Part shown: positions 1 to 64,000 of the stretch, one piece after another
Numbering within the stretch: the stretch's first letter is position 1
How the letters are laid out: each line of letters opens with the position of its first letter
Assembly (NCBI RefSeq): GCF_902713615.1
Contig: NC_052151.1
Location: 64,390,375-64,454,374, forward strand
Source: Scyliorhinus canicula
Taxonomy: Eukaryota
Direction of reading: 5' to 3'
DNA length: 64,000 bases
Notes under the pieces: model-generated
Told to the model about the DNA's origin: nothing
What the model saw: only the letters and a program-made list of their open reading frames with translations
Databases searched by the model: none
Made by a program: the position numbers and the translations under genes

Positions 1-386
1 TTATATTCCACAGGAAGCGACTAATCACTAGTCGCACATTGAGGTAACATTGGGGCGGTATAAAACACTGATTCTACTGTCTTGAAATTCAAGGAAAATG
101 GAGGTGTCTGAAAATAATAATCATCTTTATTGTCACAGGTAGGCTTACGTTAACACTGTTTGTTTGCACTGGAGTGCTGAACTTGGTGCATTTGAGTGCT
201 ACAGTGAGAGTTTGGTGACTGAGGGAGTTAGATGAGGAGGGAGCAAGGTGCTCCTTTCATTTCATTTCCGCAAAGAGCGTGAAGGGAGCCGGGAGTTTAC
301 AGAGAGTGCAGCTGACTGGGAGCAGAGTCGGAGGGCGGAGGTCCAGTTGGTCTACAGAAGAGCTATATTCTGTAAAGTAAGAGGGG

Positions 387-1324
387 ATGGAGGCTAGGGC
401 AGTTGCATGCTCCTCCTGTAGGATGTGGGTGGTGAGGGATACCACCGGTGTCCCCGCTGACTATACCTGCAGGAAGTGCACCCAACTCCAGCTCCTCAGA
501 GACCGTGTTAAGGAACTGGAGCTGGAGCTGGATGAACTTCGGATCATCCAGGAGGCAGAGGGGGTTATAGAGAAGAGTTACAGGGAGGTAGCCACACCCA
601 AGGACAAGAGTAGATGGGTTACAGTTAGGGGAAAGAAAACTAACAGGCAGACAGTGCAGAGATCCCTCGTGGCCGTTCCCCTTCAAAACAAGTATACCGT
701 TTTGGATGATGTTGGGGGGGGGGGGGAGGTGACCTACCGGGGGAAGGCCCTAGCTGCCAGGTCTCTGGCACTGAGTCTGGCTCTAGGGCTCAGAAGGGAA
801 GGGGGGAGAATAGAAAAGCAATCGTATTAGGAGATTCAACGGTTAGGGGAATAGATAGGAGATTCTGTGGTCGCAAGCGAGACTCCCGGAAGGTATGTTG
901 CCTCCCGGGTGCCAGGGCCAGGGATGTCTCCGATCGTGTCTTCAGGATCCTGAAGGGGGAGGGTGAGAAGCCAGAAGTCGTGGTGCACATTGGTACCAAC
1001 GACGTAGGTAGGAAAAGAGGTGTGGAGGTAATAAACAAGTTTAGGGAGTTAGGCTGGAAGTTAAAGGCCAGGACAGACAGAGTTGTCATCTCTGGTTTGT
1101 TGCTGGTGCCATGTGATAGTGAGGCTAGGAATAGGGAGAGAGTGCAGTTGAACACGTGGCTGCAGGAATGGTGTAGGAGGGAGGGCTTCAGGTATTTGGA
1201 TAATTGTAGTGCATTCTGGGGAAGGTGGGACCTGTACAAGCAGGACGGGTTGCATCTGAACCAGAGGGGCACCAATATCCTGGGAGGGAGGTTTTCTCAT
1301 AGTCTTCAGGAGGGTTTAAACTAA
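387..1324 (+). pseudogene. CR1 ORF1: CxxC..CxxC zinc finger, coiled coil, SGNH esterase domain; frameshifted near the G13 run (714-726)
   Basis: CSSC...CRKC, LELELDELR coiled coil, IVLGDS, VHIGTND, DGLHL. Confidence 0.9.
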
Positions 1325-3752
1325 TTTGGCAGGGGAATGGGAACTGGATTTGTAGTCCAGCAACTAAGGAAGCCGATATTCAGGACGCCAAAGTGTGTAG
1401 TGAAGCAGTGGGGAAGGTAACACTGACAAAGGAGAATACTTGCAGGCAAGGAGATGGGTTGAAGTGTGTATACTTCAATGCAAGAAGCATCAAGAATAAG
1501 GTGGGTGAACTTAAGGCATGGATCAGTACTTGGGACTACGATGTGGTGGCCATCACGGAAACTTGGATAGAAGAGGGGCTTATGGTTGTTGGAGTTCCCT
1601 GGTTATAGATGTTTCAATAAGGTTAGGGAGGATGGTAAAAGAGGTGGGGGTGTGGCATTGTTAATTAGAGATAGTATAGCTGCAGAAAGGCAGTTCGAAG
1701 AGGATCTGCCTACTGAGGTAGTGTGGGTTGAAGTCAGAAATAGGAAAGGAGCAGTCACCTTGTTGGGAGTTTTCTATAGCCCCCCCAATAGCAGCAGAGA
1801 TGTAGAGGAACAGATTGGAAAACAGATTTTGGAAAGGTGCAGAAGTCACAGGGTAATAGTCATGGGTGACTTCAACTTCCCAAACATTGAGTGGAAACTC
1901 TTTAGATAAAATAGTTTGGATGGGGTGGTGTTTGTGCAGTGTGTCCAGGAAGCTTTTCTAACACAGTATGTAGATTGTCTTACCAGAGGGGAGGCCATAT
2001 TGGATTTGGTACTTGGTAATGAGCCAGGCAGGTGATAGATTTGTTAGTGGGGGAGCATTTTGGAGGTAGTGACCACAATTCTGTGACTTTCACTTTAGTA
2101 ATGGAGAGGGATAGTTGCGTGCGACAGGGCAAGGTTTACAATTGGGGGAAGGGTAAATACAATGCTGTCAGACAAGAATTGAAGTGCATAAGTTGGGAAC
2201 ATAGGCTGTCAGGGAAGGACACAAGTGAAATGTGGAACTTGTTCAAGGAACAGGTACTGCGTGCCTTTGATATGTATGTCCCTGTCAGGCAGGGAAGAGA
2301 TGGTCGAGTGAGGGAACCATGGTTGACAAGAGAGGTTGAATGTCTTGTTAAGAGGAAGAAGGAGACTTATGTAAGGCTGAGGAAACAAGGTTCAGACAGG
2401 GCGCTGGAGGGATACAAGATAGCCAGGAGGGAACTGAAGAAGGGGATTAGGAGAGCTAAGAGAGTGCATGAAAAATCTTTGGCGGGAGGGATCAAGGAAA
2501 ACCCCAAGGCCTTTTACACATATGTGGGAAATATGAGAATGACTAGAGCGAGGGTAGATCCGATCAAGGACAGTAGTGGGAGATTGTGTATTGAGTCTGA
2601 AGAGATAGGAGAGGTCTTGAACGAGTACTTTTCTTCAGTATTTACAAACGAGAGGGGCCATATTGTTGGAGAGGACAGTATGAAACAGACTGGTAAGCTC
2701 GAGGAGATACTTTTTAGGAAGGAAGATGTGTTGGGCGTTTTGAAAAACTTGAGGATAGACAAGTCCCCCGGGCCTGACGGGATATATCCAAGGATTCTAT
2801 GGGAAGCAAGAAATGAAATTGCAGAGCCGTTGGCAATAATCTTTTCGTCCTCACTGACAACAGGGGGGGGTACCAGGGATTGGAGAGTGGCAAATGGCGT
2901 GTCCCTGTTCAAAAAAGGGAATAGGGATAACCCTGGGAATTACAGGCCAGTTAGTCTTACTTCGGTGGAAGGCAAAGTAATGGAAAGAGTACTGAGGGAT
3001 AGGATTTCTGAGCATCTGGAAAAGCATTGCTTGATTAGGGATAGTCAGCACGGATTTGTGAGGGGTAGGTCTTGCCTTACAAGTCTTATTGACTTATTTG
3101 AGGAGGTGACCAAGCATGTGGATGAAAGTAAAGCAGTGGATGTGGTGAACATGGATTTTACATGGAACATTTGATAAGGTTCCCCATGATAGGCTTATGC
3201 AGAAAGTAAGGAGGCATGAGATAGTGGGATATTTGGCCAGTTGGATAACAAACTGGCTAACCGATAGAAGACAGAGAGTGGTGGTGGTTGGCAAATATTC
3301 AGCCTGGAGCCCAGTTACCAGTGGCGTACCGCAGGGATCAGTTCTGGGTCCTCTGCTGTTTGTGATTTTCATTAATGACTTGGATGAGGGAGTTGAAGGG
3401 TGGGTCAGTAAATTTGCAGATGATACGAAGATTGGTGGAATTGTGGACAGTGAGGAGGGCTGTTGTCGGCTGCAAAGAGGCATAGATAGGATGCAGAGCT
3501 GGGCTGAGCAGTGGTAGATGGAGTTTAACCCAGACAAGTGTGAGGTTGTCCATTTTGGAAGGACAAATCTGAATGCGGAATACAGGGTTAACGGTAGGGT
3601 TCTTGGCAATGTAGAGGAACAGAGAGACATTGGGGTCGATGTTCATAGATCTTTAAAAGTTGCCACTCAAGTGGATAGAGCTGTGAAGAAGGCCTATGGT
3701 GTGCTAGCGTTCATTAGCAGAGAGATTGAGTTTAAGAGCCGTGAGGTGATGA

Positions 3753-3886
3753 TAGATAGATAGAGAAATACAGCACAGAACAGGCCCTTCGGCCCACGAT
3801 GTTGCGCCGAACTTTTGTCCTTGGTTAATCATAGAATTTTGGACAATTTTTCATGGCCAATCCACCCAACCTGCACATCTTTGGAC
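3753..3886 (-). mobile_element. 5'-truncated copy of the SINE/CR1 chimeric tail inserted into CR1 ORF2
   Basis: Reverse complement is near-identical to 4532-4666; ends in (CTAT)n. Confidence 0.9.
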
Positions 3887-4380
3887 AAAGATGCAGCTGT
3901 ACGAAACCTTGGTAAGGCCACAATTGGAGTACTGTGTGCAGTTCTGTTCACCTCATTTTAGGAAGGATGTGGAAGCTTTGGAAAAGGTGCAAAGGAGATT
4001 TACCAGGATGTTGCCTGGAATGGAGAGTAGGTCTTACGAGGAAAGGTTGAGGGTGCTAGGCCTTTTCTCATTAGAACGGAGAAGGATGAGGTGCGACTTG
4101 ATAGAGGTTTATAAGATGATCAGGGAATAGATAGAGTAGACAGTCAGAGACTTTTTCCCTGGGTGGAACAAACCATTACAAGGGGACATAAATTTAAGGT
4201 AAATGGTGGAAGATATAGGGGGGATGTCAGAGGTAGGTTCTTTACCCAGTGAGTAGTGGGGCATGGAATGCACTGCCTGGGGAAGTAGTTGAGTCGGAAA
4301 TGTTAGGGACCTTCAAACGGCTATTGGATAGGTACATGGATTATGGTAGAATAATGGAGTGTAGATGAATTTGTTCTTAA

Positions 4381-4666
4381 GGGCAGCACGGTAGCATTGT
4401 GGATAGCACAATTGCCTCACAGCTCCAGGGTCCCAGGTTCGATTTCGGCTTGGGTCACTGTCTGTGTGGAGCCTGCACATCTTCCCTGTGTGTGCGTTGG
4501 TTTCCTCTGGGTGCTCCGGTTTCCTCCCACAGTCCAAAGATGTGCAGGTTGGGTGGATTGGCCATGATAAATTGCCCTTAGTGTCCAAAATTCTATGATT
4601 AACCTAGGACAAAAGTTCGGCACAACATGGTGGGCCGAAGGGCCTGTTCTGTGCTGTATTTCTCTA
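4381..4666 (+). mobile_element. tRNA-derived SINE (HE1/V-SINE-like) head and body fused to the CR1 tail
   Basis: GGGCAGCACGGTAGC head, B-box GGTTCGATT, GGGTGCTCCGGTTTCCTCCCAC core. Confidence 0.9.
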
Positions 4667-4928
4667 TAACACTGCAATGAAGTTATTGTGAAAAGCCCCC
4701 GGTCACCACATTCCAATGCCTGTTCGGGTACACAGAGGGAGAATTCAGAATGTCTAAATTACCTAACAGAACGTCTTTCGGGACATGTGGGAGGTAACCG
4801 GAGCACCTGGAGGAAACCCACACAAACACAGGAAGAACGTGCAGACTCCAAACAGACAGTGACCCAAGCCGGTAATCGAACCTGGTGCGTGAAGCAACAG
4901 TGCTCACCGCTGTGCTACCATGCTGCCC
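4667..4928 (-). mobile_element. SINE split by the CR1 insertion; its tail lies at 111-158
   Basis: 111-158 joined to 4675-4928 is colinear with the intact copy at 61308-61615. Confidence 0.85.
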
Positions 4929-5099
4929 AATTTGGACATTTAGCAGACTCTTTTACTGACCTATGACAAAAGTGTGAATTTGTTGTCCAGTTAACTTGTT
5001 ATTGACTGTCGCTAATGCAAGAATGCTTTGGCATTAAAATTTTAAACAGTGGTGCATTGTTTTTCAACTTAGATCCAAAACTTGGGAGCAATATATTTT

Positions 5100-6134: not shown

Positions 6135-11593
<5,459 letters not shown>

Positions 11594-18174: not shown

Positions 18175-19865
18175 CACAACCTAGGCTGACACTTCAGTGC
18201 GGTGCTACAGAATTGCTGCTCTGTTGAAGGTGTTGACATTTGAATGTGGTATTAAATTGATCAATTTATATATTTATTGGCATGTGTACCAAGGTACAGT
18301 GAAACGTATTGCTCTGCTTACAGTCCTGGCGTATTGTTCCATATATAAATATCTAATAATAATAATCCTTTTTAGTATCTTAAACTAGTGTCTTAGTAGG
18401 CTTACATTAACACTGCAATGAAGTTACTGTGAAAATCCCCTCGTCACCACACTCCGGAGCCTGTTCGGGTACACTGAGGGAGAATTCAATATTCGCCGAA
18501 CAGCATGTCTTTCGGGCTTTGTGGGGGAAACCGGAGCACCCGGAGGAAACCCACACAGACACAGACAGCTCGCAGAAAGTGGCCACACTCCGGCACCGTC
18601 TTGATAATATAGCTATATTCATAGAAATTACAGTGCAGAAGGAGGCCATTTGGCCCATCAAGTCTGCACCGGCCCTTGGAAAGTGCACCACAGTTAAGCC
18701 CACCCCATTCCTGTAACCCAGTAACCCTACCTAACCTTTCTTTGGAGACTAATCCACTTAACCTGCACATCTTTGGAATGTGGGAGGAAACCGGAGCACC
18801 CGGAGGAAACCCACGCAGACACGGAGAGAACGTGCAGACTCCGCACAGACACTGAACCAAGCAGCGAATCGAACCTTGGAGCTGTGAAGCAACTGTGCTA
18901 ACCCCTGTGCTACTGTGCTGCCCACCGTGGCTAGCGCCTTGCCACCGCCAAACCGGTCCCAACCTTCCCAGCGGCCCTTGCCGCCCAGCAAGCCTGACGG
19001 ACTGATCTCCACCGTCTGCTGGAAGCAGCCCAGGCACAGTGAGTGTCCGCATGGTGGCGTCACTGGCTCCACCAGCCGCTCCCTGCAAACCAGGCACAGG
19101 CACTTGTCCAAGCTGAGGGCCGGAGCCAGGGTCTGAGGCAAGGCCTCAGGCTCAGACAGGCCGTCCCGTCTCTTTCATCCCATTGTGGCCACTCCAGTGC
19201 AGCTTGGGAACAGTTTCACTTTCCATCACCCTCCAAGAGAAATTATGGAGAGGGACCTGACCCTGCCAGGCCCTCCCCCACCTTTCCTCAGCCCGGGTAA
19301 GGGGAAACTCCCGGCAACCACCGCCTTCCTTCAAATAAATTGAGGTCCCCACCATCCTCTGAGTTGAATGTTAAAAATCCCATGGCACTGATCAAACTAA
19401 AGCTAAAGGGTTCTCCTTGATGTCCTGGCCAACACCTCTCCCTTAACGAACATCATTAAAACAGATTATGGTGGCACAGTGGCGCAGTGGTTAGCACTGC
19501 TGCCTAAGGTGCTGAGGATCCAAGTCCGATCCCGCCCCGGGTCACTGTGTTTGTGGAGTTTGTACATTCTCCCCGTGTCTGGTTGGTTTTGCCCCCACAA
19601 CCTAAAGGTGTGCAGGTTATGTGGATTGGCCGCGCTAAATTGCCCCTTAATTGGAAAAAAAGAATTGGGTACTCTAAATTAGAAAAAAAAATCATCTGGA
19701 CAATATCTTCATTGTTGTTTGTGGGAGCTTGCTGTGAACAATTTGGCTGCCACATTTCCTAAACTAGGTCAGTCACTGCATTTCAAAAGCACTCCATTGG
19801 CCGCAGAGGACTTTGGGACTTGCTGATGTTCTTAAAGGCGCTGGACAAATGCAGGTCTCTTTTCT
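18175..19865 (+). mobile_element. Old DeuSINE/SacSINE1-like element broken by insertions at 18261-19335 and 19470-19692; further fragments at ~15040-15630(-) and 30900-31040(+)
   Basis: CTAGGCTGACAC..AGTGC, AAATCCCATGGCACT, TGTCCTGGCCAA, AAAACAGATTAT, TGTTTGTGGGA, AAAGGCGCT..AAATGCA occur in the order I recall for the Deu-domain SINE. Confidence 0.7.
18995..19141 (-). pseudogene. Truncated RING-finger gene fragment, RNF168-like
   Basis: SLDKCLCLVCRERLVEPVTPPCGHSLCLGCFQQTVE resembles the N-terminal C3HC4 RING of RNF168; the last CxxC pair and an in-frame ATG are missing. Confidence 0.75.
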
Positions 19866-24454: not shown

Positions 24455-25140
24455 CCGGTAGCACAAGTGGATAGCACTGGCTTCACAGCACCAGGATCCC
24501 AGGTTCGATTCACCCACTGGGTCACTGTCTGTGCGGAGTCGGCACATTCCCCCCCTGTCTGCCTGGGTTTCCTCCGGGTGCTCCGGTTTCCTCCCATAGT
24601 CCAAAGGTGTGCAGGTCAGGTGGATTGGCTATGTTAAATTGCTCTTAGTGACCAAAAAGGTTAGGAGGGGTTATTGGGTTGTGGGGATAGGGTGGAACAT
24701 AGAACAGTACAGCACAGAACAGGCCCTTCGGCCCTCAATGTTGTGCCGAGCCATGATCACCCTACTCAAACCCACGTATCTACCCTATACCCGTAACCCA
24801 ACAACCCCCCCCCCCCCCCGCTTAACCTTACTTTACACTATGGGCAATTTAGCATGGCCAATCCACCTAACCCGCACATCTTTGGACTGTGGGAGGAAAC
24901 CGGAGCACCCGGAGGAAACCCACGCACACAGGGGGAGGACGTGCAGACTCCACACAGACAGTGACCCAGCCGGGAATCGAACTTGGGACCCTGGAGCTGT
25001 GAAGCATTTATGCTAACCACCATGCTACCCTGCTGCCCGTAACACTTGGAAGTGGGCCGTAAGGCCCGTAAGGAAGTGAGGGCTTAAGTGCAGACTCGAT
25101 GGGCCAAATAGCCTCCTTCTGCACTGTATGTTCTATGCTC
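24455..25140 (+). mobile_element. SINE (+) with a second SINE (-, ~24696-25038) nested in its tail
   Basis: Two opposed SINE cores; the host tail resumes at ~25074. Confidence 0.85.
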
Positions 25141-33209: not shown

Positions 33210-36200
33210 GAGTCATGGTCATACAGCACAGAAAGAGGGCCATCGGCCCATTGCGTCCGCACCAACCATCAAGCACCTATCTAATCTAATCCCATTTTCC
33301 AGCACTTGGTCTTGTATCCTATGGCATTTCAGGTGCTCACCTAAAAGTTGTGAAGGTCCCTGTCTCCATCACCCTTTCGGACAATGAGTTCCAAATTGCA
33401 ACCACCCTCTGGGTGTAAAGGTTTTTCCTTACGTCTCCTCTCCTCTAAACATAGAACATAGAACAGTACAGCACAGAACAGGCCCTTCGGCCCTCGATGT
33501 TGTGCCGAACAATGATCACCCCACTTAAACCCACGTAACCCGTATACCCATAACCCAACAATCCCCCCATTAACCTTACACTACGGGCAATTTAGCATGG
33601 CCAATCCACCTAACCCGCACATCTTTGGACTGTGGGAGGAAACCGGAGCACCCGGAGGAAACCCACGCACACACGGGGAGGACGTGCAGACTCCACACAG
33701 ACAGTGACCCAGCCGGGAATCGAACCTGGGACCCTGGAGCTGTGAAGCATTGATGCTAACCACCATGCTACCGTGAGGCCCCAAAAAATGAAGTTACTGT
33801 GAAAAGCCCCTAGTCGCCACATTCCGGCGCCTGTCCAGGGAGGCTGGTACGGGAATCGAACCGTGCTGCTGGCCTGCTTGGTCTGCTTTAAAAGCCAGCG
33901 ATTTAGCCTGGTGAGTTAAACCAGCCCCTGTATACCTCCTGCCCCTTCCCATAAAATCTATGCTTTCTGGTTATTGACCCCTCCACTAAGGGAAAAAGTA
34001 CCTTCCTGTCCACCCTATCTATGGCCCTCATCATTTTCTACACCTTAATCAGGTCCCCCCTCAGCCTTCTCTGCTCGAGATGAAACAACCCCAGCCTATC
34101 CAGTGTCTCTCTTGATAGCTGAAATGATCCAGCCCAGGCAACATCCTGGTGAATCTCCTCTGCACTCTCTCTGGTGCGATCACTTCCTTTCTATACTGTG
34201 GTGACCAGACCTGCAAACAGTACTCCAGCTGGGGCCTAGCCACTGTTATCTACAGCTGCAGCATAACCTCCCCACTCTTATATTCAATGCCTCGGTTAAT
34301 AAAGGCAAGAATCCCATAGGCCTTCTTAACCACCTTATCTACCTGGCCTGCTGGCTTCGGAGATCTATGGACATGCACACCAAGGTCCCTTTGATCCTCT
34401 GTAATTCCTAGGATCTGACCATTCATTATATATTCCCTTGTCTTGTTAGTCCTCCCAAAATACATTACTTCCCACTTTCATGGTTAAATTCCATTTGCCA
34501 CTCCTCTGCCCACTTAACCACTATATCGTCTTGTAATCTAAGGCCTTGCTCCTCACTATTTACAGCATCACCAATTTTTGTATCATCTGCAAACTTACTT
34601 ATCATACCTCCTATATTCACATCCAGATCATTTAAAAAAAATTAAATTTAGGGTCCCCAATTCTTTTTTTCCAATTAAGGGGCAATTTAACGCGGCTAAT
34701 TCACTCACCCTGCACATCTTTTGAGTTGTGGGGGTGAGACTCACGCAGACACAGGGAGAAGGTACAAACACCACATGGACAGTGACCCAGGGCCGGGATA
34801 AAATCTGGGTCCTCGGCGGCGAGAGACAGCAGTGCTAACCACTGCTCCACCATGCTGCCCCCACATCCAGATCATTAATGTATACTACAAAAAGGGCAGC
34901 ACGGTGGCCTAGTGGTTAGCACAACCGCCTCACAGCGCTGAGGTCCCAGGTTCGATCCAGGCTCTGGGTCACTATCCGTGTGGAGTTTGCACATTCTCCC
35001 CGTGTCTGCGTGGGTTTTGCCCCCACAACCCAAAAATGTGCAGAGTAGGTGGATTGGCCACGCTAAATTGCCCCTTAATTGGAAAAAATAATTGGGTAAT
35101 CTAAATTTGAAAAAAAAATGTATACACAAACAACAAAGGACCCAGCACCAATCCCTGCGGAACATCCTGGACACAGGCATCCAGTTTCAAAAGCAATCTT
35201 CAACCACCACCCTCTGCTTCTTACCACTAAGCCAGTTTTGGATCCATTTTGCCAAATTACCCTGGATCCCCTGGGCTCTTACCTTCTTCATTAGCCCCCC
35301 ATGTGGGACATTGTCAAATGCCTTACTAAAGTCCATGTAGACTACTTCAACTACACTACCCTCAACTACACACCTAGTCACCCCTCAAAAAATTCAATCA
35401 CGTTTGTAAGACATGGGCTGGGATTCTCCGAGCCCCCGCACTGCAATCACGCCTGGCGCGGGGGTGGACAATGGGGCGTCTGACCCACGACACCTTTGAA
35501 CAATTCTCGGGCGACTGGAGAATCGCCGCCAGCCGCGTGCACATGGTCGACGTGGCGCTGGTCGGGGGCCCTTGAAAGCGGCCCCCATGGTGATTCTCCA
35601 CGGTCGACCGGCCGAATTCCCACCGCCGTGGTTCTCGTACAGTTCCACCCAGCGGGAGCTCAGCGTCGCGGCTGCGGTGGCCGTCCTGTGAGGGTCGGGG
35701 GGATCAGTTTCTGGGTGGGGGGGGTACCACGATAGTTAGGCCCGTGATTGGGAGCCACCGATCGGTGGGTGCACGCGATCTGGGGGAGGCCTACCTTCTT
35801 CCGTGGCAGTCTGTTGTGTGGGTGCGCCATGTCGCGCGGGGTCCGCGCCGCAGTGCGCATACGTGGACCCGCAGCCAGAAGTGCAGGGCCCCGTATCAGC
35901 AGCAGGAGCTGCTCGCTGCACGCCGGGGCCCTGTTAGCCCCCCCTAAAAATGGAGAATCACCCCAGACTTTTTGGAAAAATTCCGGAGTGTTTCTCGCCC
36001 GTTTTCTTGCGGGTGTGGGGACATAGCCCCATTATTGGAGAATCCCAGCCATGATTTCCATTGAGAAAGCCATGCTGACTATCCTTGATTAATCCTTGCC
36101 TCTCCAAGTGAAGATTAATTCTGTCCCTCAGAATTTTGTTCAGTAGATCCCCTACCACTGAAGTTAGACTCACTGACCTGTAATTTTCATGTTTGCACCT

Positions 36201-42763: not shown

Positions 42764-43769
42764 CCTCAAGCTTGAGTGCGTCCCTCAGCACGTAGTCCTG
42801 GAACTCGAAATGTGCCAGTCTGCAACACTCGGTTGAGGACAATTCTTTGCACTGGAAGATCAGCAAGTTTCGGGCAGACCAAAGAGCGTCTTTCACCGAG
42901 TTGATGACCTTCCAGCAGCAGTTGATGTTTGTCTCGGTGTGTGTCCCTGGAAACAGTCCGTATAGCACAGAGTCCTATGTCACGGAGCTGCTTGGGATGA
43001 ACCTGGACAAATACCACCGCATTTAGGGCAGCACGGTAGCATAGTGGTTAGCATCAATGCTTCACAGCTCCAGGGTCCCAGGTTCGGTTCCCGGTTGGGT
43101 CACTGTCTGTGCGGAGTCTGCACGTCCTCCCCGTGTGTGCGTGGGTTTCCTCTGGGTGCTCCGGTTTCCTCCCACAGTCCAAAGATGTGCAGGTTAGGTG
43201 GATTGGCCATGCTAAATTGCCCGTAGTGTCCTAAAAAGTAAGGTTAAGGGGGAGTTGTTGGGTTACGGGTATAGGGTGGATACGTGAGTTTGAGTGGGGT
43301 GATCATTGCTCGGCACAACATCGAGGGCCGAAGGGCTGTTCTGTGCTGTACTGTTCTAAATTCTAAATCTCTCTCCAGACCTTCTTTGCAAAGGCACATT
43401 CCACAAGGAGGTGGGTGACCGTCTCAATTCCCCACAGCCACTCAAGCTTGGGGCAGCTGCCGCCAAGGCGCAATGGGGAAAGACCACTGTGTAAGGTCTC
43501 ACCAGCAAATGTACACCGAGGGGTGGGTAACAGTGTAAAACTAGGTCTTCCGTGTCTTCAATACTCCAATGTATAAAAGAAACATGACAATGTAAATATT
43601 TAAGAACTGTAACGTAAAGAAGGATGTGTGTGTAATGTCATCCCAATTGAATGGAAGAAAGACAAGTGAATGTGTAACTTTGATGGAAATGTACAGTCAA
43701 GACAATTTGAAATGTTCTGTAATGTTTATTAGAGATTTTATGAATAAAGTATATTTTTGGGGGAAAAAA
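42764..43769 (+). mobile_element. L1/Tx1-like 3' fragment with inverted 5' part; SINE nested at 43026-43365
   Basis: Minus-strand ...VKDALWSARNLL...YVLRDALKL continues on the plus strand as LKLGAAAAKAQWGKTTV*, then AATAAA and an A-tail; TSD AAGCCTCTCTC(A/G)GAG. Confidence 0.88.
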
Positions 43770-46700
43770 AAGCCTCTCTCGGAGTCAAGGCATGGTAGAC
43801 AACCTTTGTAAAAGCAGTTTAAGTATCTTCGCTGGACCAGGAAAATATGGTCCCCAGAATTGATTATCATCCCTGTGTTGTGTTGCAACTGTCAGCTGGT
43901 TATTTTGGATATTGTTTGGGGAACAGGGGAAGTCAGGTATCGTAGTTCTACATGAACTATGTGTGTTTAGTAATTCATATACCACATTTGACTGAGAGTA
44001 GAACAGTTCTGTTCATGTGTATTTGTATTTTCTTTGCTTTAATAAATAGTCTTTAATAATTCTTACATGCCGACCTGGCTACTTCTTTTTACTGGGGTTT
44101 CACTTGTCACCTCACACAAAACAAAACTATACATCCCCACGATCCGGTGTTAAAAGTTAGGCTACCTCCGCAGATAACATCAGTGTGCTTAGTGATAAGT
44201 GTGAAACTAGAACATAGAACATAGAACATAGAACAGTACAGCGCAGAACAGGCCCTTCGGCCCTCGATGTTGTGCCGAGCAATGATCACCCTACTCAACC
44301 CCACGTATCCACCCTATACCCGTAACCCAACAACCCCCCCCCCCCCCAACCTTACTTTTAAGGACACTACGGGCAATTTAGCATGGCCAATCCACCTAAC
44401 CCGCACATCTTTGGACTGTGGGAGGAAACCGGAGCACCCGGAGGAAACCCACGCACACACGGGGAGGACGTGCAGACTCCGAACAGACAGTGACCCAGCC
44501 GGGAACCGAACCTGGGACCCTGGAGCTGTGAAGCATTTATGCTAACCACCATGCTACCGTGCTGCCCACTAAGGGTAAGAACTTGCAGAGTCATGCCACA
44601 TCTCCGGTATATACAGACCAGTAGCAAGTTTAGCACACTGGGCTAAAGAGCTGGCTTTTAAAGCAGACCAAGGCAGGCCAGCAGCACGGTTCAATTCCCG
44701 AATCAGCCTCCCCGAACAGGCACCGGAATGTGGCGACTCGGGGCTTTTCACAGTAACTTCATTTGAAGCCTACTCGTGACAATGAGCAATTTTCATTTAA
44801 TTTCATACTGGTCTGGATGAAAAAGATTGAAATGTTTTTCTCAGTGGAATCTTGGACTTGTGTGATAAACAAACTGACTGCTGCGTAAGGGAAGGGAAGA
44901 CAACTTTTAATTTGAGCATCACTGAAAGTTGCTAAGTGATGGTGGTAAATATGTATTGTAAATGGACCCATTGCTGAAAGTATTACTGACTGATGTCTGC
45001 CTTTGGGAGCAGTCGGGGCTTTTGCTGCCCCACTGGGCAATATGTTGGGGGTGGGGGGTAATTTTATTCTTGCCTTCCAACTGTGAAACCCAGCCAGCGC
45101 GTGGTGCACCTGTTTAAACCCGGCCCAATGTTACCCTTCACTGACTTCAATGGAGAGTACAATCAGGTCGGGTGTAAAGCCTGTGTGGCACCTCATCCTG
45201 GCTTTATTCTAATGGGTGGGTTCGGGTAAAATTTTCCCACCATGATTCTACTGCTGCTTCATACAATGTAGAGTTTAGATTTGACATCACGCCAATATGT
45301 TGACCAGCCATCATTTGCCCAAGAGATTCTAAACCAAATTATATAGCGTTTTTCAGACATCCCCAGTAGTTATCCAGCATCAGACTGGGCAGTGTGATAT
45401 CCTGAATGCCATTTGGTAATCCGCACAGTAAAGGCTATAGAGACTGTCACAAACATCAGTTACAGCCAAATGCAGAGGTGAACATCTCCCAGCCTCTGTA
45501 TCAGCACAAACAGCATGTCGCAAAGGTCCACCACTCAAACTACCAAACTTCAGTCTGTGAGCTGGAGCCCAGATACTACACCAGTCATGTTAATCTGTAA
45601 ACTTGAAAGTAAGGAATATTGCTGGGACAAGGGGAAGGGAGGGCCATCCGGTGCAGCAAGCGAGTATCAGCAGAGATGAAAAAGATTGAAATAGTTTTTC
45701 CATATGTAAAAAAACAATTGCTTCCCAAGCTGTGTATTAAAAAAACCATTTGAAGTGCAGGCCCTTCATAGTAAAATACCATGGAGGCTGAACAAGTAGC
45801 CACTGTCAGTAGACACAATGTGCAAGTAACCCTCGCCCATTCAGTTTAATACAGGCAGCATGCCCATTGCATGCCACCATTCAATGTCATGTTTGCAGAG
45901 TGCAGCTGCTATTGAGAGGCTTCATCAGGTGCCTAGCACATGTTAAATCGAGCCTGCACTTATTAAGGCCAGCCTGCAGTTTTAAAGTGAAGATGCCTGG
46001 AGCAGGCACCGGTGGGCAGTGCACAAGTTATTCTGGCTTCATTAGCAAATAGTGAGGAATGGCTCAACAAGGCAGAGATATGAATCTCGGAGATGCTCTC
46101 CAAACCTTTTGGCGGCTGCGCTGAAGGCCGTGGTGGAGGAGATGGAAAGGAGGAGAGTTGCATCCCCAGGGAGGAAACAGCCATCCATCCACACGGTTTG
46201 CAGAGCAGGTAGTGGTGACACAGGTTTTAGCACAGAGCTTGGAGCCCATCCTTTCCACCATGAAAGTGGTAGTCAACTATATCATCACATTTCTAAACCA
46301 AACCATGATACAGCAGCTCACACAAGCTCAAGGATCAGCACCTTGGGCGGGATTCTCCGTCCATTCACGGCAGCGGGGTTCCCCTACCTCGCTGCAGTGA
46401 ATGGGAGATTTGGCTGAGCACCATATTCTCCATCCTCGCTGGCAGCGGCAGTGGGGCGGACTCGCAATAGGGAACCCTGGCCCAAATGACCCACTGTTTC
46501 ATGGTGCAAGGCCAAAGCAATGGGTAACGGTACAAGTAAAGAAAGAATAGACATGTCGAGAGGAAGTATGAATAGCAGGATGCTGGGTTTCTGCTGCCTG
46601 AAAGCAAAGTGAAAGAAATAAGAAGCAAAAAGAAGCAGACAAATATGGGGAGTGGTCACAACCTCAAATTGTCAAGTTTAAAAGGCTGTAAAGTTTGTAG

Positions 46701-47989: not shown

Positions 47990-50900
47990 GTGAGAGCAGG
48001 GGGTCAGAAGGTGAAAAAAATTGAGAGAGAACTAGGAAATAGGGCCAGTATGGCCCTGAGGAAGAGCAGACAGGGAGATGTTGCTGAAAACAGCAGAACT
48101 GGTGGCCTGAAGTGCATATGCTTTAATGCAAGAAGTATAACAGGTAAGGCACTTGAACTTAGAGCTTGGATTAGTACTTGGAACTACGATGTTGTTGCCA
48201 TTACAGAGACCTAGTTGAGGGAAGGACAGGATTGGCAGCTAAACATTCTAAGATTTAGATGTTTCAGGCTGGATAGAGCGGGATGTAAAAAGGGTGGAGG
48301 AGTTGCGCTACTGGTGAGGGAGAATATCACAGCTGTACTACGGGAGGACACTTCAGAGGGCAGCGAGTCTATATGGGTAGAGATCAGGAATAAGAAGGGT
48401 GCAGTCACAATGTTGGGGGTTTACTACAGGCCTCCCAACAGCCAGCGGGAGATAGAGGAGCAGAGAGGTAGACAGATTTTGGAAAGGAGTAAAAGCAACA
48501 GGGTTGTTGTGATGGGAGACTTCAACTTCCCCAGTATTGACTGGGACTCACTTAATGCTAGGGGCTTGGATGGGGCAGAAATGTAACGAGCATCCAGGAG
48601 GGCTTTTAGAACATAGAACATTACAGTGCAGTACAGGCCCTTCGGCCCTCGAGTTGCATCGACCTATGAAACCACTCTGAAGCCCATCTACACTATTCCC
48701 TTTGTTTATCCAATGACCATTTAAATGCCCTTAATGTTGGCGAGTCCACTACTTTTTAAAACAATATGTAGATAGTCCAACTAGGGAAGGGGCTATACTG
48801 GACATGGTATTGGGGAATGAGCCCGGCCGGTGGTAGAAGTTTCAGTCGGGGAGCATTTCCGGAACAGTTACCACAATTCAGTAAGTTTTAAAGTGCTGGT
48901 GGACAAGGATAAGAGTGGTCCAAGGGTGAATGTGCTAAATTGGGGGAAGGCGAATTTTAACAATATTAAACTGAAGAACAAAGATTGGGGGCGGTTGTTT
49001 GAGGGTAAATCAAAATCTGACATGTGGGAGGCTTTCAAATGTCAGTTGAAAGGAATTCAGGACCGGCATGTTCCTGTGAAGAAGCAGGATAAATATGGCA
49101 AATTTTGGGAACCTTGGATAACGAGAGATATTGTAGGACTCGTCAAAAAGTAAAAGGTGGCATTTGTCAGGGCTAGAAGGCTGGGAACAGCCGAAGCCTG
49201 TGTGGAATATAAGGAAAGTAGGAAGGAACTTAAGCAAGGAGTCAGGAGGGCTAAAAGGGGTCCCGAAAAGCCATTGGCAAATAGGGTTAAGGAAAATCCC
49301 AAGGCTTTTTACACATACATAAAAAGCAAGAGGGTAGCCAGGGAAAGGGTTGGACCACTAAAGAACAGGGGAGGGAATTTATGTGTGGAGCCAGAGGAAA
49401 TGGGTGAGGTACTAAATGAATACTTTGCATCAGTATTCATCAAATAGAAGGAATTGGTGGATGTTGAGTCTGGAGAGGGGTGTGTAGATAGACTGGGTCA
49501 CATTGAGATCCAAAAAGATAAGGTGTTGGGCGTCTTGAAAAATATTAAGATGGATAAGTCCCCAGGGCCTGATGGGATCTACCCCAGAATACTGAAGGAG
49601 GCAAGAGAGGCAATTGCTGAGGCCCGTACAGAAATCTTTGGATCCTCACTGTCTTCAGGTGATGTCCCGGAGGACTGGAGAATAGCCAATGGTTTTCCTT
49701 TGTTTAAGAAGGGTAGCAAGGATAATCCAGGGAACTACAGGCCGGTGAACCTTACATCAGTGGTAGGGAAATTACTGGAGGGAATTCTTCGAGACAGCAT
49801 CTACTCCCATTTGGAAGCAAGTGGTTGTATTAGCGAAAGTCAGCATGGTTTTGTGAAGGGGAGGTCATGTCTCACTAACTTGGTAGTTTTTTCGAGGAGG
49901 TCACAAAGATGATTGATGCAGGTAGGGCAGTGGATGTTGTCTATATGGACTTCAGTAAGGCCTTTGACAAGGTTCCTCATGGCATGGTACAAAAGGTGAA
50001 GTCTCACGGGATCAGAGCTGGCAAGATGGATACAGAACTGGTTGGGTCATAAAAGGCAGAGAGTAGCAATGGAAAGGTGCTTTTCTGATTGGAGGGCTGT
50101 GACTAGTGGTGTTCCACAGGGATCAGTGCTGGGACCTTTGCTGTTCGTAGTATATATAAATGATTTGGAGGAAAATGTAACTGGTCTGATAAGTACGTTT
50201 GCGGACGACACAAAGGTTGGTGGAATTGCGGATAGCGATGAGGACTGTCAGAGGATACAGCAGGATTTAGATTGTTTGGAGATTTGGGCGGCGAGATGGC
50301 AGATGGATTTTTATCCGGACAAATGTAAGGTAATGCGTTTTGGAAGGTCTATACAGGTAAGGAATATACAGTGAATGGTAGAACCCTCAAGAGTATTGAC
50401 AGTCAGAGAGATCTTGGTGTACAGGTCCACAGGTCACTGAAAGAGGCAACACAGAAGGTAGTCAAGAAGGCATACGGCATGCTTGCCTTCATTGGCCAGG
50501 GCATTGAGTATAAAAATTGGCAAGTCATGTTGCAGCTGTATAGACCCTTAGTTAGGCCACACTTGGAGTATAGTGTTCAATTCTGGTTGCCACACTACCA
50601 GAAGGATGTGGAGGCTTTAGAGAGGGTGCAGAAGAGATTTACCAGGATGTTGCCTGGTATGGAGCTCATTAGCTATGAGGAGAGGTTGAATAAACTTGGT
50701 TTGTTCTCACTGGAATGAAGGAGGTTGAGGAGTGACCTGATAGAGGTCCACAAAACTATGAGGGGCATAGACAGAGTGGATAGTCAGAGACTTTTTCCAA
50801 GGATAGCGGGTCAGTTACTAGGGGGCACAGGTTTAAGGTGCGAGGGGCAAGGTTTAGAGGAGATGTATGAGGCAAGTATTTTACACTGAGGCAAGTGGGT

Positions 50901-51115
50901 GCCTGGAACCCGCTGCCGGAGGAGGTGACGGAAGCAGGTATGATAGTGACGGTTAAGGAGCATCTTGACAAATACATGACTAGGATGGGGATAGAGGGAT
51001 ACGGACCCTGGAAGTGTAGAATATTTTAGTTTTGATGGGCAGCATGGTTGGCGCAGGCTTGGAGGGCCGAAGGGCCTGTTCCTGTGCTGTACTTTTCTTT
51101 GTTCTTTGTTCTTTG
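47990..51115 (+). mobile_element. 5'-truncated CR1 LINE (ORF2 to tail), decayed; antisense CR1 tail inserted at ~48609-48752
   Basis: [35 protein letters not shown]; tail GGCCGAAGGGCCTGTT...(TTCTTTG)n. Confidence 0.95.
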
Positions 51116-52710: not shown

Positions 52711-52964
52711 CTTTTTCAGCAATACATAACTATATTATATCTTTCTTTAATAATTAATGTATGTGTTTAAAATGAAGCCACAAAAGCCACTCTCTCCTCA
52801 ATTCTGTCTTACCGATGACTCTATCCAATGACATTATTGACTCAGTCCTCCACTCACAAGACACGGGCAATTGAAAACTTTAAACATAGGAATTTGTAAC
52901 AGTAGGGAAGCTATATTACTTACTGGGTAAAAGCCAGAATTAAACATTTGCCAAATACACATGC

Positions 52965-53298
52965 AGCGGCGTGGTGGTATTGTCACTGGTCTAGAAAGCC
53001 AGAGACCAAGAGTAATGCTCTGGGGACCCAGGTTCGAATCCCGCCATTGCTGATGGTGAAATTTGAATTCAATAAAAATTTGGAATTAAAAGTCTAATAA
53101 TGACCATGAAACCATTGTCGATTGTCATAAAAACCCATCTGGTTCATTAATGTCCTTCAGGGAAAGAAATCTGCCATCCTTACCTGGTCTGGCCTACATG
53201 TGACTCCAGACCCACAGCAATGTGGTTCATTCTGAACTGCTGCCCCAAATCCAATTAGGGATGGGCACAGCCCACGTCCCGTGAACAAATAAAAAAAA
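52965..53298 (+). mobile_element. Older tRNA-derived SINE family; other copies at ~15105-15465(-) and 23580-23930(+)
   Basis: B-box GGTTCGAATCC; shared CATCTGGTTCA.TAATGTCC..AGGGAA.GAAATCTGCC.TCCTTACCTGGTCTGGCCTACATGTGACTCCAGACC. Confidence 0.8.
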
Positions 53299-61079: not shown

Positions 61080-62460
61080 AGACAGGGCTGGGGGGAATGG
61101 GCAGCAGAGTGACAGATGCAGTTTAATGCAGAGTTACATGAAGTAATTCATTTTGTTAGAAAAAATGGAGAGAGGCAATATAAAGAGTACATTCTAAAGG
61201 GAGTACAAGAACACAAAGACCTGGTGGTATAAGTGCACAAATCATTGAAAATGGCAGGGCAGGTTGAAGATGTGGTTAAAAAGACATGCAGGAATCTAGG
61301 CTTTATAAATAATAATAATCTATATTAGTGTCACAAGTGGGCTTACATTAACACTGCAATGAAGTTACTGTGACAAGCCCCTAGTCGCTACATTCCGGCG
61401 CCTGTTCGGGTACATTGAGGGAGAATTCAGAATGTCCAATTCACCTAACAGCACGGCTTTCGGGACTTGTGGGAGGAAACTGGAGCACCCGGAGGAAACC
61501 CAAGCAGACATAGGGAGAACGTGCAGACTCTGCACAGGCAGTGACCTAAGTCGGGAATTGAAACCGGGTCCCTGCCACTGTGAAAAAACAGTGCTAACCA
61601 CTGTGCTAGTGTACCACCCATGAAGGCAGAGAGTGCAAAAGCAACTAAGTTATGATGAACCTTTATAAAACTCTGGTTCAGTGTCACCTGCAGTACTTTG
61701 TCCAATTCTGGCACTGCACGTTTGGAAGGATGTGAAGGCTTAGATGGTGCAGAATAGATTTACAAGAATTGTTGCACTTTTTTTTCTTTTAAAAAAAATT
61801 TTGGCTACCCAATTATTTTATCCAATTAAGGGGCTAATTTAGCGTGGCCAATCCACCTATCCTGCACATCATTTGGGTTGTGGGGGTGAAACCCACGCAG
61901 ACACGGGGAGAATGTGCAAACTCCTCACGGACAGTGACCCAGGGCCGGGATCGAACCCAGGTCCTCAGCGGCATAGGCAGTAATGCCAACCATTGTGCCA
62001 CCATGCTGCCCTGAGAATTGTTGCACTTTTGAGGGATTTCAGTTGCGTGAATAGATTGGAGAAACTGCAATTGATCGCTTGAGGGAAGAAGAAATTGAGA
62101 GGAGATTTGGTTGAGGTGTTCAAAACCATGAGAGGACATGACAGAGTAGAGTGGAAGGAAATGCTCCCATTGACAGTAGGGCCTATAATCAGAGGACATC
62201 AATTTCAGGCAATTGGCAACAGAACCCAAGATGACATGAAAAAGAACCTTTCCACACAGTGAATGGTTAGGATCTGGAATGCATAGCCTGAGAGGGAGAG
62301 AGGAGAAGATTCGGTTAAGGCTTTCAAATGGGAACTGAATTGCAGGACTGTGGGGCAAGGGCTGGAGCATGGAATTAGCTGAGTTACTCTTCCAGAGAGC
62401 CATCACAGACTCGACAGGCCATATGACCTCCTTTTCTGCCATAACCATTCTTAAATTCTA
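61080..62460 (+). mobile_element. Old CR1 3' fragment with two nested SINEs (61308-61615, 61777-62011)
   Basis: WQMQFN..EVIHF and KDLVV..HKSLK remnants; CR1-like tail. Confidence 0.75.
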
Positions 62461-64000
62461 TGGTGATATCACCATTTAGCATCAATCCAGGTGGAGTAAT
62501 TTACTGCATCCAAATAACACTTGACTTTCAACAAACAATGGCCTAATAACCTAAGTGCAGATATGCAGTACACAGGGTAAACTCCCTATGCTGCATTCAA
62601 AATTGGTCCTTGGATGTCATTGTCAAATGTAGAAGCTGGAATATATGTGACACCCATAGGATTCCCATAGGATTCAGGAAGACCCCGTGTCCAGCAGGAA
62701 AAAATGTTGTGTTAAAATAAGCCTTGGGTGGGAATGGAGAGGAACTGGACATGCACAAACTAATTTCGGCTGAATGGGGGGAACTAAAATTAGTCTGATA
62801 ATTCTGATTTTATATACCATTTGGTTCATTTACAGATACTTTTGTCTTTTCACTATCCATTTACAGAGGAACAACACACTGCAGTAAAACCTACTGTAAG
62901 GGCTGAGTACATTGTTCATATAGAAGATCTTGAATATAAAGCAAATGGAGACAGATGAAATATGTATGCCTCAATGAGTCATCACTCATTGCACGTTGCC
63001 AGCTTTTTCATGCCTCACAGGGGCTGGTTTAGCTCACTGGGCTAAATCGCTGGCTTTTAAAGCAGACCAAGCAGGCCAGCAGCACGGTTCGATTCTCGTA
63101 CCAGCCTCCCCGGACAGGCGCCGGAATGTGGCGACTAGGGGCTTTTCACAATAACTTCATTGAAGCCTACTCGTGACAATAAGCGATTTTCATTTCATTT
63201 CATGTTTCAGATTCTGTGCAGAGAGAAATCTGACTCCAATTAAAATGAATAAAAACTAAATTAATGGATCAATGATTTGTACTAGACATCATCCTCACCA
63301 ATCTGCTTGCTGCAGATGCATCTGTCCATGACATCTGCACAGAATTTACAGTGCAGAGTGACCACTGCACAGTCCTTCTGGAGACATAGTCTGTTCTTCA
63401 CATTGCAGATACCCTCCATCATGTTCAGTGGCACTACCACCGTGCTAAATGGGATAAACTTTGAACAGATCTAGCAACTCAAGACTGGGCATCCATGAGG
63501 TGCTGTGGGCCATCAGCAGCGGCAAAATTGTACTTAACCGCAGTCTGCAACCTTATGGCCAGCATATTCCACACTCTACCATTACCACCAATCCAGGGGG
63601 TCAACTCTGGTTCAACGAAGAGCGCAGGAGAGCATGCCACGAGCAACACCAGGCATACCAAAATATGAGGTGTCAACCTGGCAAAGCTACAATACAGAAC
63701 TACTTGTGTGCCAAACAGCATAAGCAGCAAGTAATTGTCAGAGCTGGGTAATTCCACAATGAACGCATCAGACCATATCCAGCCGTGAATGTTGGTGGCC
63801 AATTAAACAACTCAACTTAGGCAGCACGGTAGCACAAGTGGATAGCACTGAGGCTTCACAGCGCCAGGGTCCCAGGGTCCCAGGTTCAATTCCCTGCAGG
63901 GTCACTGTCTGTGCGAGTCTGCATGTTCGCCTCGTGTCTGCGTGGGTTTCCTCCGGGTGCTCCGGTTTCCTCCCACAGTCCAAAGAAGTGCAGGTTAGGT

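What the first reader, a model, noticed from the sequence alone, without database searches (positions are those of the whole stretch)
151..4674. A CR1 LINE carrying a tRNA-SINE inside its 3' UTR that moved as one unit
Seen: (a) the CR1 body runs at 4381 straight into a SINE head and core (A/B-box-like), which then runs into a CR1-type tail; (b) the whole unit 159-4666 is bounded by an 8-bp direct repeat TAACACTG that splits an older SINE, whose intact equivalent is at 61308; (c) the same SINE-to-tail junction (GTCCAAAATTCTATGATTAACC.AGGACAAAAGTTCGGC) occurs in an independent truncated copy at 3753-3886; (d) the other CR1 (47990-51115) has an ordinary tail with no SINE. Established: shark HE1-type SINEs share 3' tails with partner CR1-type LINEs. 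Inference: this is a CR1 subfamily whose master copy contains a Pol III promoter, so each full-length LINE insertion would also seed a SINE source gene ending in the LINE's own RT-recognition tail. A single SINE-to-LINE template switch is the alternative.
Basis: partly seen in the sequence, partly recalled or inferred. Interest (0 to 1): 0.75.

Follow-up and report, generated by a model that had tools for sequence, protein, structure and literature searches.

The report
Shark LINE carrying an embedded SINE
A dead jumping gene (a CR1 LINE) in a shark-like genome has a copy of its own parasite, a short SINE element, wedged directly behind its last gene and was pasted into the genome with it as one piece; this is a tidy variant of known mobile-DNA behaviour, and this scan has already noted it several times elsewhere in this genome.

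Summary
A full-length but decayed CR1-group LINE (159-4666) sits between 8-bp duplications (TAACACTG) that split an older SINE. Its ORF2 stop codon is followed directly by a SINE head and core (4381-4598), then by a LINE-type tail.

New here:
- A sibling LINE copy (L010) has the same ORF2 end but runs straight from TTCTTAA into the tail. The SINE block is therefore a secondary insert inside the LINE's own 3' UTR.
- The block is flanked by TTAA on both sides and ends in one CR1 octamer (ATTCTATG).
- The recognition hairpin downstream belongs to the LINE.
- A 5'-truncated, inverted copy nested at 3752-3890 carries the same SINE-to-UTR joint, so the composite 3' end was retrotransposed at least twice.

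I read this as a propagating CR1 sub-lineage with a passenger SINE. I could not retrieve a second copy of the ORF2/SINE-head joint itself.

The "SINE nursery" inference is unsupported:
- No stand-alone SINE with this short link occurs among about 25 SINE copies in the window.
- The abundant young SINE that uses this tail joined it at a different point.

The scan noted the same thing at least seven times on other DNA of this genome. One of those notes was followed up and reached the same verdict.

The parts
151..158 (.). Left copy of the 8-bp target-site duplication TAACACTG
   Evidence: the rejoined flanks align without a gap to the intact older SINE.
115..158 (-). 3' part of the older SINE (minus strand, (ATT)n-type end) that was the insertion target
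   Evidence: collinear with the intact copy at about 61307-61350.
159..386 (+). LINE 5' UTR, true 5' end of the family
   Evidence: table 8. Contigs from two samples start to match exactly at 159. In X2 record 17, 522 other letters precede the match; X1 record 1 behaves the same way.
387..1324 (+). ORF1 (frameshifted): N-terminal coiled-coil/Cys-rich part plus a GDSL-type esterase
   Evidence: ORFs 387-830 and 980-1324. Lipase_GDSL_2, E 1.3e-10.
1315..1321 (+). TTTAAAC heptamer at the ORF1/ORF2 overlap; ORF2 is open in the -1 frame from here
1315..4380 (+). ORF2 (endonuclease plus reverse transcriptase), dead. It has at least five frame changes, in-frame stops and one nested insertion. The family stop codon TAA is at 4378-4380.
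   Evidence: Exo_endo_phos and RVT_1. P0121 and P0122 end MECRLICS.
3752..3890 (-). Nested, 5'-truncated copy of the composite 3' end: SINE core end, the same short link, LINE tail, and a (TCTA)n end
   Evidence: 90.4% over 135 nt.. Absent from L001, L006 and L009 and from laid contigs.
4377..4380 (+). TTAA, left copy of the 4-nt repeat flanking the SINE block (overlaps the ORF2 stop codon)
   Evidence: L010 reads TTCTTAA followed directly by TCTAGGAC.
4381..4598 (+). Embedded SINE block: tRNA-like head (A box 4392-4402, B box 4436-4446), V-type core, ending in one CR1 octamer ATTCTATG (4590-4597). It has no hairpin tail of its own.
   Evidence: 89-90% identity to the young stand-alone copies. 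Octamer motif as given in PMC5729268.
4599..4602 (+). TTAA, right copy of the 4-nt repeat
4603..4666 (+). The LINE's native 3' UTR. A hairpin lies at about 4613-4661, with the apical GGGCC-GAAG-GGCC at 4632-4645. The terminal TCTA repeat is at the very end.
   Evidence: L010 has the same sequence directly after the stop codon. L006 and L007; the same hairpin folds in the window LINE, in L007 and in the other CR1.
4667..4674 (.). Right copy of the target-site duplication TAACACTG
4667..4930 (-). 5' part (head and core) of the older target SINE

Best explanation
This is one dead, full-length copy of a CR1-group LINE sub-lineage (esterase-type ORF1, endonuclease plus reverse-transcriptase ORF2).

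How the SINE got in (inferred). In an ancestral source copy, a V-type (HE1-like) SINE head and core landed at a TTAA directly behind the ORF2 stop codon, upstream of the LINE's own recognition hairpin and terminal repeat. The most likely route is ordinary CR1-type insertion of a SINE RNA that lacked its hairpin tail. Less likely is a pair of template switches.

Why it spread (inferred). The LINE's 3' recognition end stayed intact, so the source copy kept retrotransposing and carried the SINE as an internal passenger.

What is shown. One such event put the whole 4.5-kb unit into an older SINE with an 8-bp duplication. A later event put a 5'-truncated copy of the same composite 3' end, inverted, into this LINE's ORF2. 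The copy then decayed.

What is not shown. The embedded Pol III promoter could in principle make each insertion a SINE source gene. Nothing here shows that it does.
For: One duplication bounds the whole unit, and the target SINE is collinear once rejoined.

The 5' end at 159 coincides with the start of similarity in independent contigs (table 8).

Empty-site control: L010 is a 5'-truncated copy, 89.8% identical over 4157-4380, with the same ORF2 end. It reads TTCTTAA followed directly by TCTAGGACAAAAGTTCGGCACA, which is the window's 4603-4624. L007, an 80% relative, also has a SINE-less native UTR of the same kind.

The block is flanked by TTAA on both sides and ends in ATTCTATG, the CR1 terminal octamer (PMC5729268).

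The hairpin downstream folds alike in three diverged LINEs.

The second copy of the SINE-core/TTAA/UTR joint at 3752-3890 is 90.4% identical, inverted, and has its own (TCTA)n end. It is absent from other LINE copies. For such a joint to land inside a given 4.5-kb element by chance, many elements with this end must have been active.

Weak hints that other copies cross 4380 come. Contigs carrying the family's T at 4367 have 45-54 letters to their nearest end. A 3-nt deletion at 4371 was called in 4, 2 and 1 contigs of three runs.

Leads only: at least seven earlier notes on other DNA of this genome describe the same composite, and one was followed up with the same verdict.
Against: I could not retrieve a second sequence that shows the ORF2-stop/SINE-head joint.
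- The only same-subfamily copy whose UTR I could read (L010) lacks the SINE.
- L001 is cut at 4362 by another element.
- The ENA sample that holds many more copies does not serve DNA.
- Searches with the minus-strand ORF that spans the joint found nothing that crosses it. These blanks are uninformative, because typical SINE heads have stops in that frame.

The read laying tables were truncated and made of contigs, so they give neither counts nor proof that the joint is bridged.

The JGI contigs may come from a different shark species than the window.
Confidence: 0.72

Rival explanations
1. In-situ nesting. A SINE-less LINE like L010 inserted here with the 8-bp duplication. Only afterwards did a SINE insert into its 3' UTR at this locus. 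The unit never moved as one, and the fragment at 3752-3890 is a local derivative of this very copy.
For: SINE-less siblings with the same ORF2 end exist. The block has its own short flanking repeat (TTAA) and a CR1-type end, as a separate insertion would. No second copy of the 5' joint was retrieved.
Against: The fragment at 3752-3890 carries the same SINE/TTAA/UTR joint, has its own (TCTA)n end, and is inverted 0.7 kb upstream. For a daughter of a single locus to land inside its own 4.5-kb parent is about a one-in-a-million event per insertion. The fragment shares none of the host's private tail changes: the host reads ACATGGTGG where the fragment and L007 read ACATCGTGG. Earlier notes report further copies elsewhere (leads only).
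Confidence: 0.1
2. One-off template-switch chimera made during this single integration. The reverse transcriptase hopped between SINE RNA and LINE RNA while inserting here.
For: The SINE starts at its first nucleotide at the joint, as after run-off at an RNA 5' end. Template-switch chimeras of SINEs with pre-tRNAs are noted repeatedly in this genome (leads only). The mechanism is well established for CR1 and L1 (PMC5729268).
Against: The sequence behind the SINE is the LINE's native UTR (L010, L007). Two switches would therefore be needed, leaving and re-entering the LINE RNA at the same TTAA, plus loss of the SINE's own hairpin. The 3' joint is also present in a second insertion, so the event was not unique to this integration.
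Confidence: 0.06
3. SINE nursery, the reader's main inference (an extension of the best explanation, not exclusive of it). The embedded head is an active Pol III promoter, so every composite insertion founds a SINE source gene that already ends in the LINE's recognition tail.
For: A and B boxes are present at the right spacing. [quoted passage not shown] The nested fragment could equally be a truncated copy of such a SINE.
Against: No full-length stand-alone SINE with the short link occurs among about 25 SINE copies of four subfamilies in 64 kb. The abundant young subfamily with this LINE-type tail (95-97% identity among its copies) joins the tail through a link about 70 nt longer, at a different point. 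It therefore did not arise from this composite (loose ends at 4590 and 4617). Each box has a mismatch in this copy. There are no expression data.
Confidence: 0.15

Closest known systems
HE1 V-SINE and its partner LINE HER1 in sharks and rays (Ogiwara et al. 1999, 2002, as tabulated in PMC3747384)
   Same: A tRNA-headed SINE with a conserved central core that depends on a CR1-group LINE and ends in that LINE's tail. The stand-alone copies in this window fit this picture.
   Different: There the SINE and the LINE are separate elements that share only the tail. Here the SINE head and core lie inside the LINE, between the ORF2 stop codon and the LINE's own tail.
TguSINE1/PittSINE of passerine birds (PMC5729268)
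   Same: CR1-mobilised elements with a recognition hairpin plus an ATTCTRTG-type terminal repeat. New combinations arise by reverse-transcriptase template switching and are bounded by one duplication.
   Different: Those are head swaps that make new SINEs. No LINE coding body is involved.
U6/L1 and other LINE-1 chimeric retrocopies (Buzdin et al. 2002, cited in PMC5499810; bioRxiv 10.1101/2025.02.02.635956)
   Same: Two RNAs fused in one insertion with a single duplication, and the small RNA complete at its 5' end.
   Different: Those chimeras are one-off, and the small RNA sits at the 5' side of a truncated LINE 3' end. Here the small element is internal to a full-length LINE, and the joint recurs.
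LINE 3' transduction (established for L1; my own knowledge)
   Same: Foreign sequence carried along by a LINE as cargo.
   Different: Transduced sequence lies downstream of the LINE's own end and comes from read-through. Here the cargo lies upstream of the recognition tail and is part of the element.
SINE modules inside other transposons: the V domain in the MER6 DNA transposon (PMC6887750) and a Ceph-SINE-like piece in the 5' UTR of Ingi-3_AC (PMC5786205)
   Same: A SINE-derived segment hitch-hiking inside an autonomous or different element, attributed to recombination.
   Different: Those are core fragments without the promoter head and sit in other positions. Here a complete head plus core sits directly after the stop codon of the SINE's own partner LINE.

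Membership tests
CR1-group LINE (canonical CR1 type with esterase ORF1) | ORF2 with apurinic-type endonuclease and reverse transcriptase | tested here: met
   Exo_endo_phos (E 1.3e-8) and RVT_1 (E 4.7e-10 and 2.7e-8) on the ORF2 pieces.
CR1-group LINE (canonical CR1 type with esterase ORF1) | ORF1 with an esterase (GDSL/SGNH) domain | tested here: met
   Lipase_GDSL_2, E 1.3e-10, above the curated cut-off. PMC13343379 states that vertebrate canonical CR1s encode an esterase ORF1.
CR1-group LINE (canonical CR1 type with esterase ORF1) | 3' end is a hairpin plus a short terminal repeat, with no poly(A) | tested here: met
   the same hairpin is present in the window LINE, in L007 and in the other CR1, and the terminal repeats are TCTA or TTCTATG. 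The fold z-scores alone are not significant (-0.9 to -1.7).
CR1-group LINE (canonical CR1 type with esterase ORF1) | Placement inside the CR1 clade in a reverse-transcriptase tree | not tested
V-SINE / HE1-type SINE | tRNA-derived head with Pol III A and B boxes | tested here: inconclusive
   both boxes are present with one mismatch each. ARAGORN and Rfam give no tRNA call. Stand-alone copies have TAGCATAGTGG and GGTTCGATTCC.
V-SINE / HE1-type SINE | Conserved central V domain | not tested
   I compared the block only with SINE copies of the window, not with a published V-domain consensus. The name rests on my recall and on earlier notes.
V-SINE / HE1-type SINE | Own LINE-derived 3' tail | tested here: not met
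   The embedded block ends in a single octamer and has no hairpin of its own. The hairpin behind it is the LINE's. The block is therefore a SINE-derived insert, not a complete SINE.
One-off template-switch chimeric retrocopy | Single duplication around both parts, with the small RNA complete at its 5' end | tested here: met
One-off template-switch chimeric retrocopy | The joint is unique to one locus | tested here: not met
   The SINE/UTR joint is present twice in the window, in independent insertions.
LINE 3' transduction | Cargo lies downstream of the element's own 3' end | tested here: not met
   The cargo lies between the stop codon and the native tail.

The most novel reading that the evidence does not exclude
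A CR1 sub-lineage has a working Pol III SINE promoter directly behind its stop codon. Every insertion that retains its last ~290 nt would then be a ready-made SINE gene ending in the currently active LINE's recognition tail. That would give SINEs a route to renew their tails: insert into the partner's 3' UTR, with no RNA-level recombination needed. It would also tie SINE bursts directly to LINE bursts.
Probability: 0.12. Interest if true: 0.7.

Novelty: new variant of a known kind. Interest (0 to 1): 0.42.

Why it matters
SINEs are normally seen as separate parasites that share only a tail with their LINE. Here a LINE lineage carries its parasite's promoter head and core inside itself, and an empty-site sibling shows the state before capture.

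This has three possible uses:
- It is a clean natural example of how SINE and LINE modules get shuffled.
- It gives a concrete, countable test of whether SINEs can obtain new tails by sitting in a LINE's 3' UTR.
- It gives repeat annotators a reason not to split such copies into "LINE plus SINE".

If the lineage is only a passenger-carrying curiosity, the value is mainly descriptive.

Tried and rejected
Microhomology at the 5' joint. The other CR1 has GGGCAGCATGG in its UTR, which suggested a homology-guided switch into the SINE head. Alignment with L007 and L010 shows that this motif corresponds to the window's 4606-4616, downstream of the block. I dropped the idea.

L1-mediated entry of a short poly(A) SINE. 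The flanks are not L1-like, and the block ends in a CR1 octamer.

Scans of viral and prokaryote genome collections for the joint: nothing, as expected.

Word search with the minus-strand ORF across the joint: blank.

Full HMMER search with the same ORF: 346 hits. Most stop within or just past the SINE head (query residues about 66-74), and the few that run further do so at low identity (37-41% in the alignment). The one candidate that seemed to cross the joint (P0191, L011) is an unrelated distant SINE with chance similarity.

Relatives that gave no answer. L001 is cut at 4362 by an L1-like element. L002 is cut at 4314. L008 and L009 end before the UTR. L006 jumps from 4339 straight to the tail, either as a deletion variant or as another 3' form.

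ENA sample ERZ26222911 holds most relatives but serves no DNA.

The search of earlier findings by sequence: blank, which means nothing.

Literature: five searches found no paper describing a LINE lineage with a whole SINE head and core in its 3' UTR. Absence from this open-access library does not prove novelty.
Full report
WHAT IS THERE. Window 159-4666 is a full-length CR1-group LINE.
- It has a 5' UTR (159-386).
- ORF1 (387-1324) carries a GDSL-type esterase domain.
- ORF2 opens in the -1 frame at a TTTAAAC heptamer (1315-1321) and carries endonuclease and reverse-transcriptase domains.
- The copy is dead. ORF2 has to be followed through at least five frame changes, several in-frame stops and a 139-nt nested insertion.
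- Position 159 is the family's real 5' end. Contigs from two independent samples begin to match exactly there, one of them after 522 unrelated letters (table 8).

THE BOUNDARY. TAACACTG occurs at 151-158 and at 4667-4674. When the unit and one copy of the repeat are removed, the two flanks form one older SINE on the minus strand. It aligns without a gap at the rejoined site to the intact copy at about 61307-61610 (81% over 302 nt). This is a genuine target-site duplication, not a chance repeat.

THE 3' END.
- In this copy ORF2 stops at a private TGA (4366-4368).
- In nearly all laid contigs position 4367 is T. Two database proteins from other copies end ...MECRLICS. The family's stop is therefore the TAA at 4378-4380.
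- The next base, 4381, is the first base of a SINE head (GGGCAGCACGG). Its A and B boxes have one mismatch each.
- The head and core run to 4590 and are 89-90% identical to the young stand-alone SINEs of the window. Those young copies are 95-97% identical to each other.
- After the core come one CR1-type octamer ATTCTATG (4590-4597), then TTAA (4599-4602), then 64 nt that end the element.

THE KEY CONTROL. L010 is a contig of shark DNA inside a JGI metagenome. It holds a 5'-truncated copy of the same subfamily, 89.8% identical over 4157-4380, with the same ORF2 end. Its stop codon TTCTTAA is followed directly by TCTAGGACAAAAGTTCGGCACA. That sequence is the window's 4603-4624.
- L007, an 80% relative, also has a SINE-less UTR of the same kind.
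- The stretch behind the SINE is therefore the LINE's own 3' UTR.
- It carries the hairpin around GGGCC-GAAG-GGCC that folds alike in three diverged LINEs.
- The SINE block (4381-4598) is a secondary insert between the stop codon and that UTR, flanked by TTAA on both sides.
- The block has no hairpin tail of its own.
It is a SINE piece sitting inside a LINE UTR.

DID IT MOVE AS A UNIT? The structure alone cannot separate two readings. In one, the composite was inherited from a composite source. In the other, a SINE-less LINE landed here and a SINE nested into it later. The fragment at 3752-3890 decides it.
- It is inverted and 5'-truncated, and it carries its own (TCTA)n end.
- It is absent from L001, L006, L009 and from laid contigs.
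- It contains the same SINE-core/octamer/TTAA/UTR joint at 90.4% identity.
- That joint can only have arisen by the capture event, so the fragment descends from the same capture.
- It does not share the host's private tail change.
- A daughter of a single locus landing inside its own 4.5-kb parent is very improbable. The simpler reading is that many elements with this end were active, both before and after this copy arrived.
- Weak hints in the contig tables point the same way. Contigs with the family's T at 4367 have 45-54 letters to their nearest end. A 3-nt deletion at 4371 was called in contigs of three runs.

WHAT I COULD NOT SHOW. I did not obtain a second sequence with the ORF2-stop/SINE-head joint.
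- The only readable sibling UTR (L010) is SINE-less.
- L001 is cut at 4362 by an L1-like element.
- The ENA sample with most relatives serves no DNA.
- Protein searches with the minus-strand ORF across the joint found only SINE-derived ORFs.
- Read laying returned contigs only, with truncated tables, so it gives no counts.

HOW THE SINE GOT IN (inferred). The 4-nt flanking repeat and the terminal octamer favour ordinary CR1-type insertion of a SINE RNA that had lost its hairpin region into a source LINE copy. Two template switches that leave and re-enter the LINE RNA at the same TTAA are possible but less economical. I rate this about 60:40. No stand-alone SINE of the hairpin-less form is in the window.

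THE SINE-NURSERY INFERENCE. This is not supported.
- The window holds about 25 SINE copies of four subfamilies. They are a young CR1-tailed form with a long link, an older CR1-tailed form, a short A-tailed form, and the old (ATT)n form.
- None is a stand-alone element with the short link.
- The young subfamily that does use this LINE family's tail keeps about 70 nt of older link and joins the tail at a different point (loose ends at 4590 and 4617). It acquired the tail by a separate event.
- A Pol III transcript from 4381 would meet its first TTTT at 4951 and so would contain the hairpin. The idea is mechanistically possible but untested.

COMPARISON WITH WHAT IS KNOWN.
- HE1/HER1-type tail sharing is known (PMC3747384).
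- CR1 hairpin-plus-octamer recognition and template-switch head swaps are known (PMC5729268).
- One-off LINE chimeras are known (PMC5499810 citing Buzdin et al. 2002; bioRxiv 10.1101/2025.02.02.635956).
- SINE modules inside other transposons are known (PMC6887750, PMC5786205).
- I found no paper on a LINE lineage carrying its partner SINE's complete head and core behind its stop codon. The library is limited, so this is not proof of novelty.

EARLIER NOTES OF THIS SCAN. At least seven notes on other DNA of this genome describe the same composite. One was followed up and judged a well-supported curiosity. I treated these as leads. My own evidence agrees with them, and it adds the empty-site sibling and the finding that the tail is the LINE's own.

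VERDICT. The "moved as one unit / sub-lineage" reading is likely (about 0.7). The SINE-source reading is unproven (about 0.12-0.15). This is a new variant of a known kind, of moderate interest.

Noticed in passing
window 1315-1321: TTTAAAC (U_UUA_AAC) lies in the ORF1 frame just before the ORF1 stop, and ORF2 is open in the -1 frame from this point. This looks like a programmed -1 frameshift site between ORF1 and ORF2.
   Followed up: partly
window, e.g. 8598-8790, 17116-16940 (-), 19520-19700, 25944-25790 (-), 34894-35110, 57942-57730 (-), 62011-61800 (-): About ten copies of a short SINE form end in ...TTAATTGGAAAAAA..TTGGGTAC..AAATT plus an A-run, and have no CR1 hairpin tail. This is compatible with mobilisation by a poly(A)-dependent LINE, as earlier notes suggest.
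   Followed up: no
window 4613-4666 versus 24700-24749, 33459-33510, 43310-43358, 44229-44278: The young SINE subfamily (95-97% identity among four copies) carries a tail nearly identical to this LINE family's hairpin region, joined through an older, longer link. This is a separate tail acquisition from the same LINE family.
   Followed up: partly
window 171-229 (joints 223 to 171 and 229 to 177): In other copies of the LINE family, a 53-nt segment of the 5' UTR is tandemly repeated in contigs of several runs. Repeat subunits near the 5' UTR of CR1-group elements are mentioned in PMC13343379.
   Followed up: no
L001 1074-1746: The 5' end of an L1-like element, with a coiled-coil ORF1 of the L1 type, abuts the CR1 copy at the position equal to window 4362.
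   Followed up: no
window 48600-48750: The other CR1 (47990-51115) also carries a small nested insert that contains a CR1-type tail on the minus strand (match at 48648-48614).
   Followed up: no
window 52963-53051 and 63021-63110: ARAGORN calls tRNA-Ser(aga) and tRNA-Phe(aaa). These are probably SINE heads or tRNA pseudogenes and were not examined.
   Followed up: no
L001, L002, L006-L008, L010 (JGI sample 3300026616); ENA sample ERZ26222911: Assemblies filed as metagenomes hold much cartilaginous-fish host DNA, including hundreds of CR1 fragments. L010 begins with a long run of C, probably an assembly artefact.
   Followed up: no
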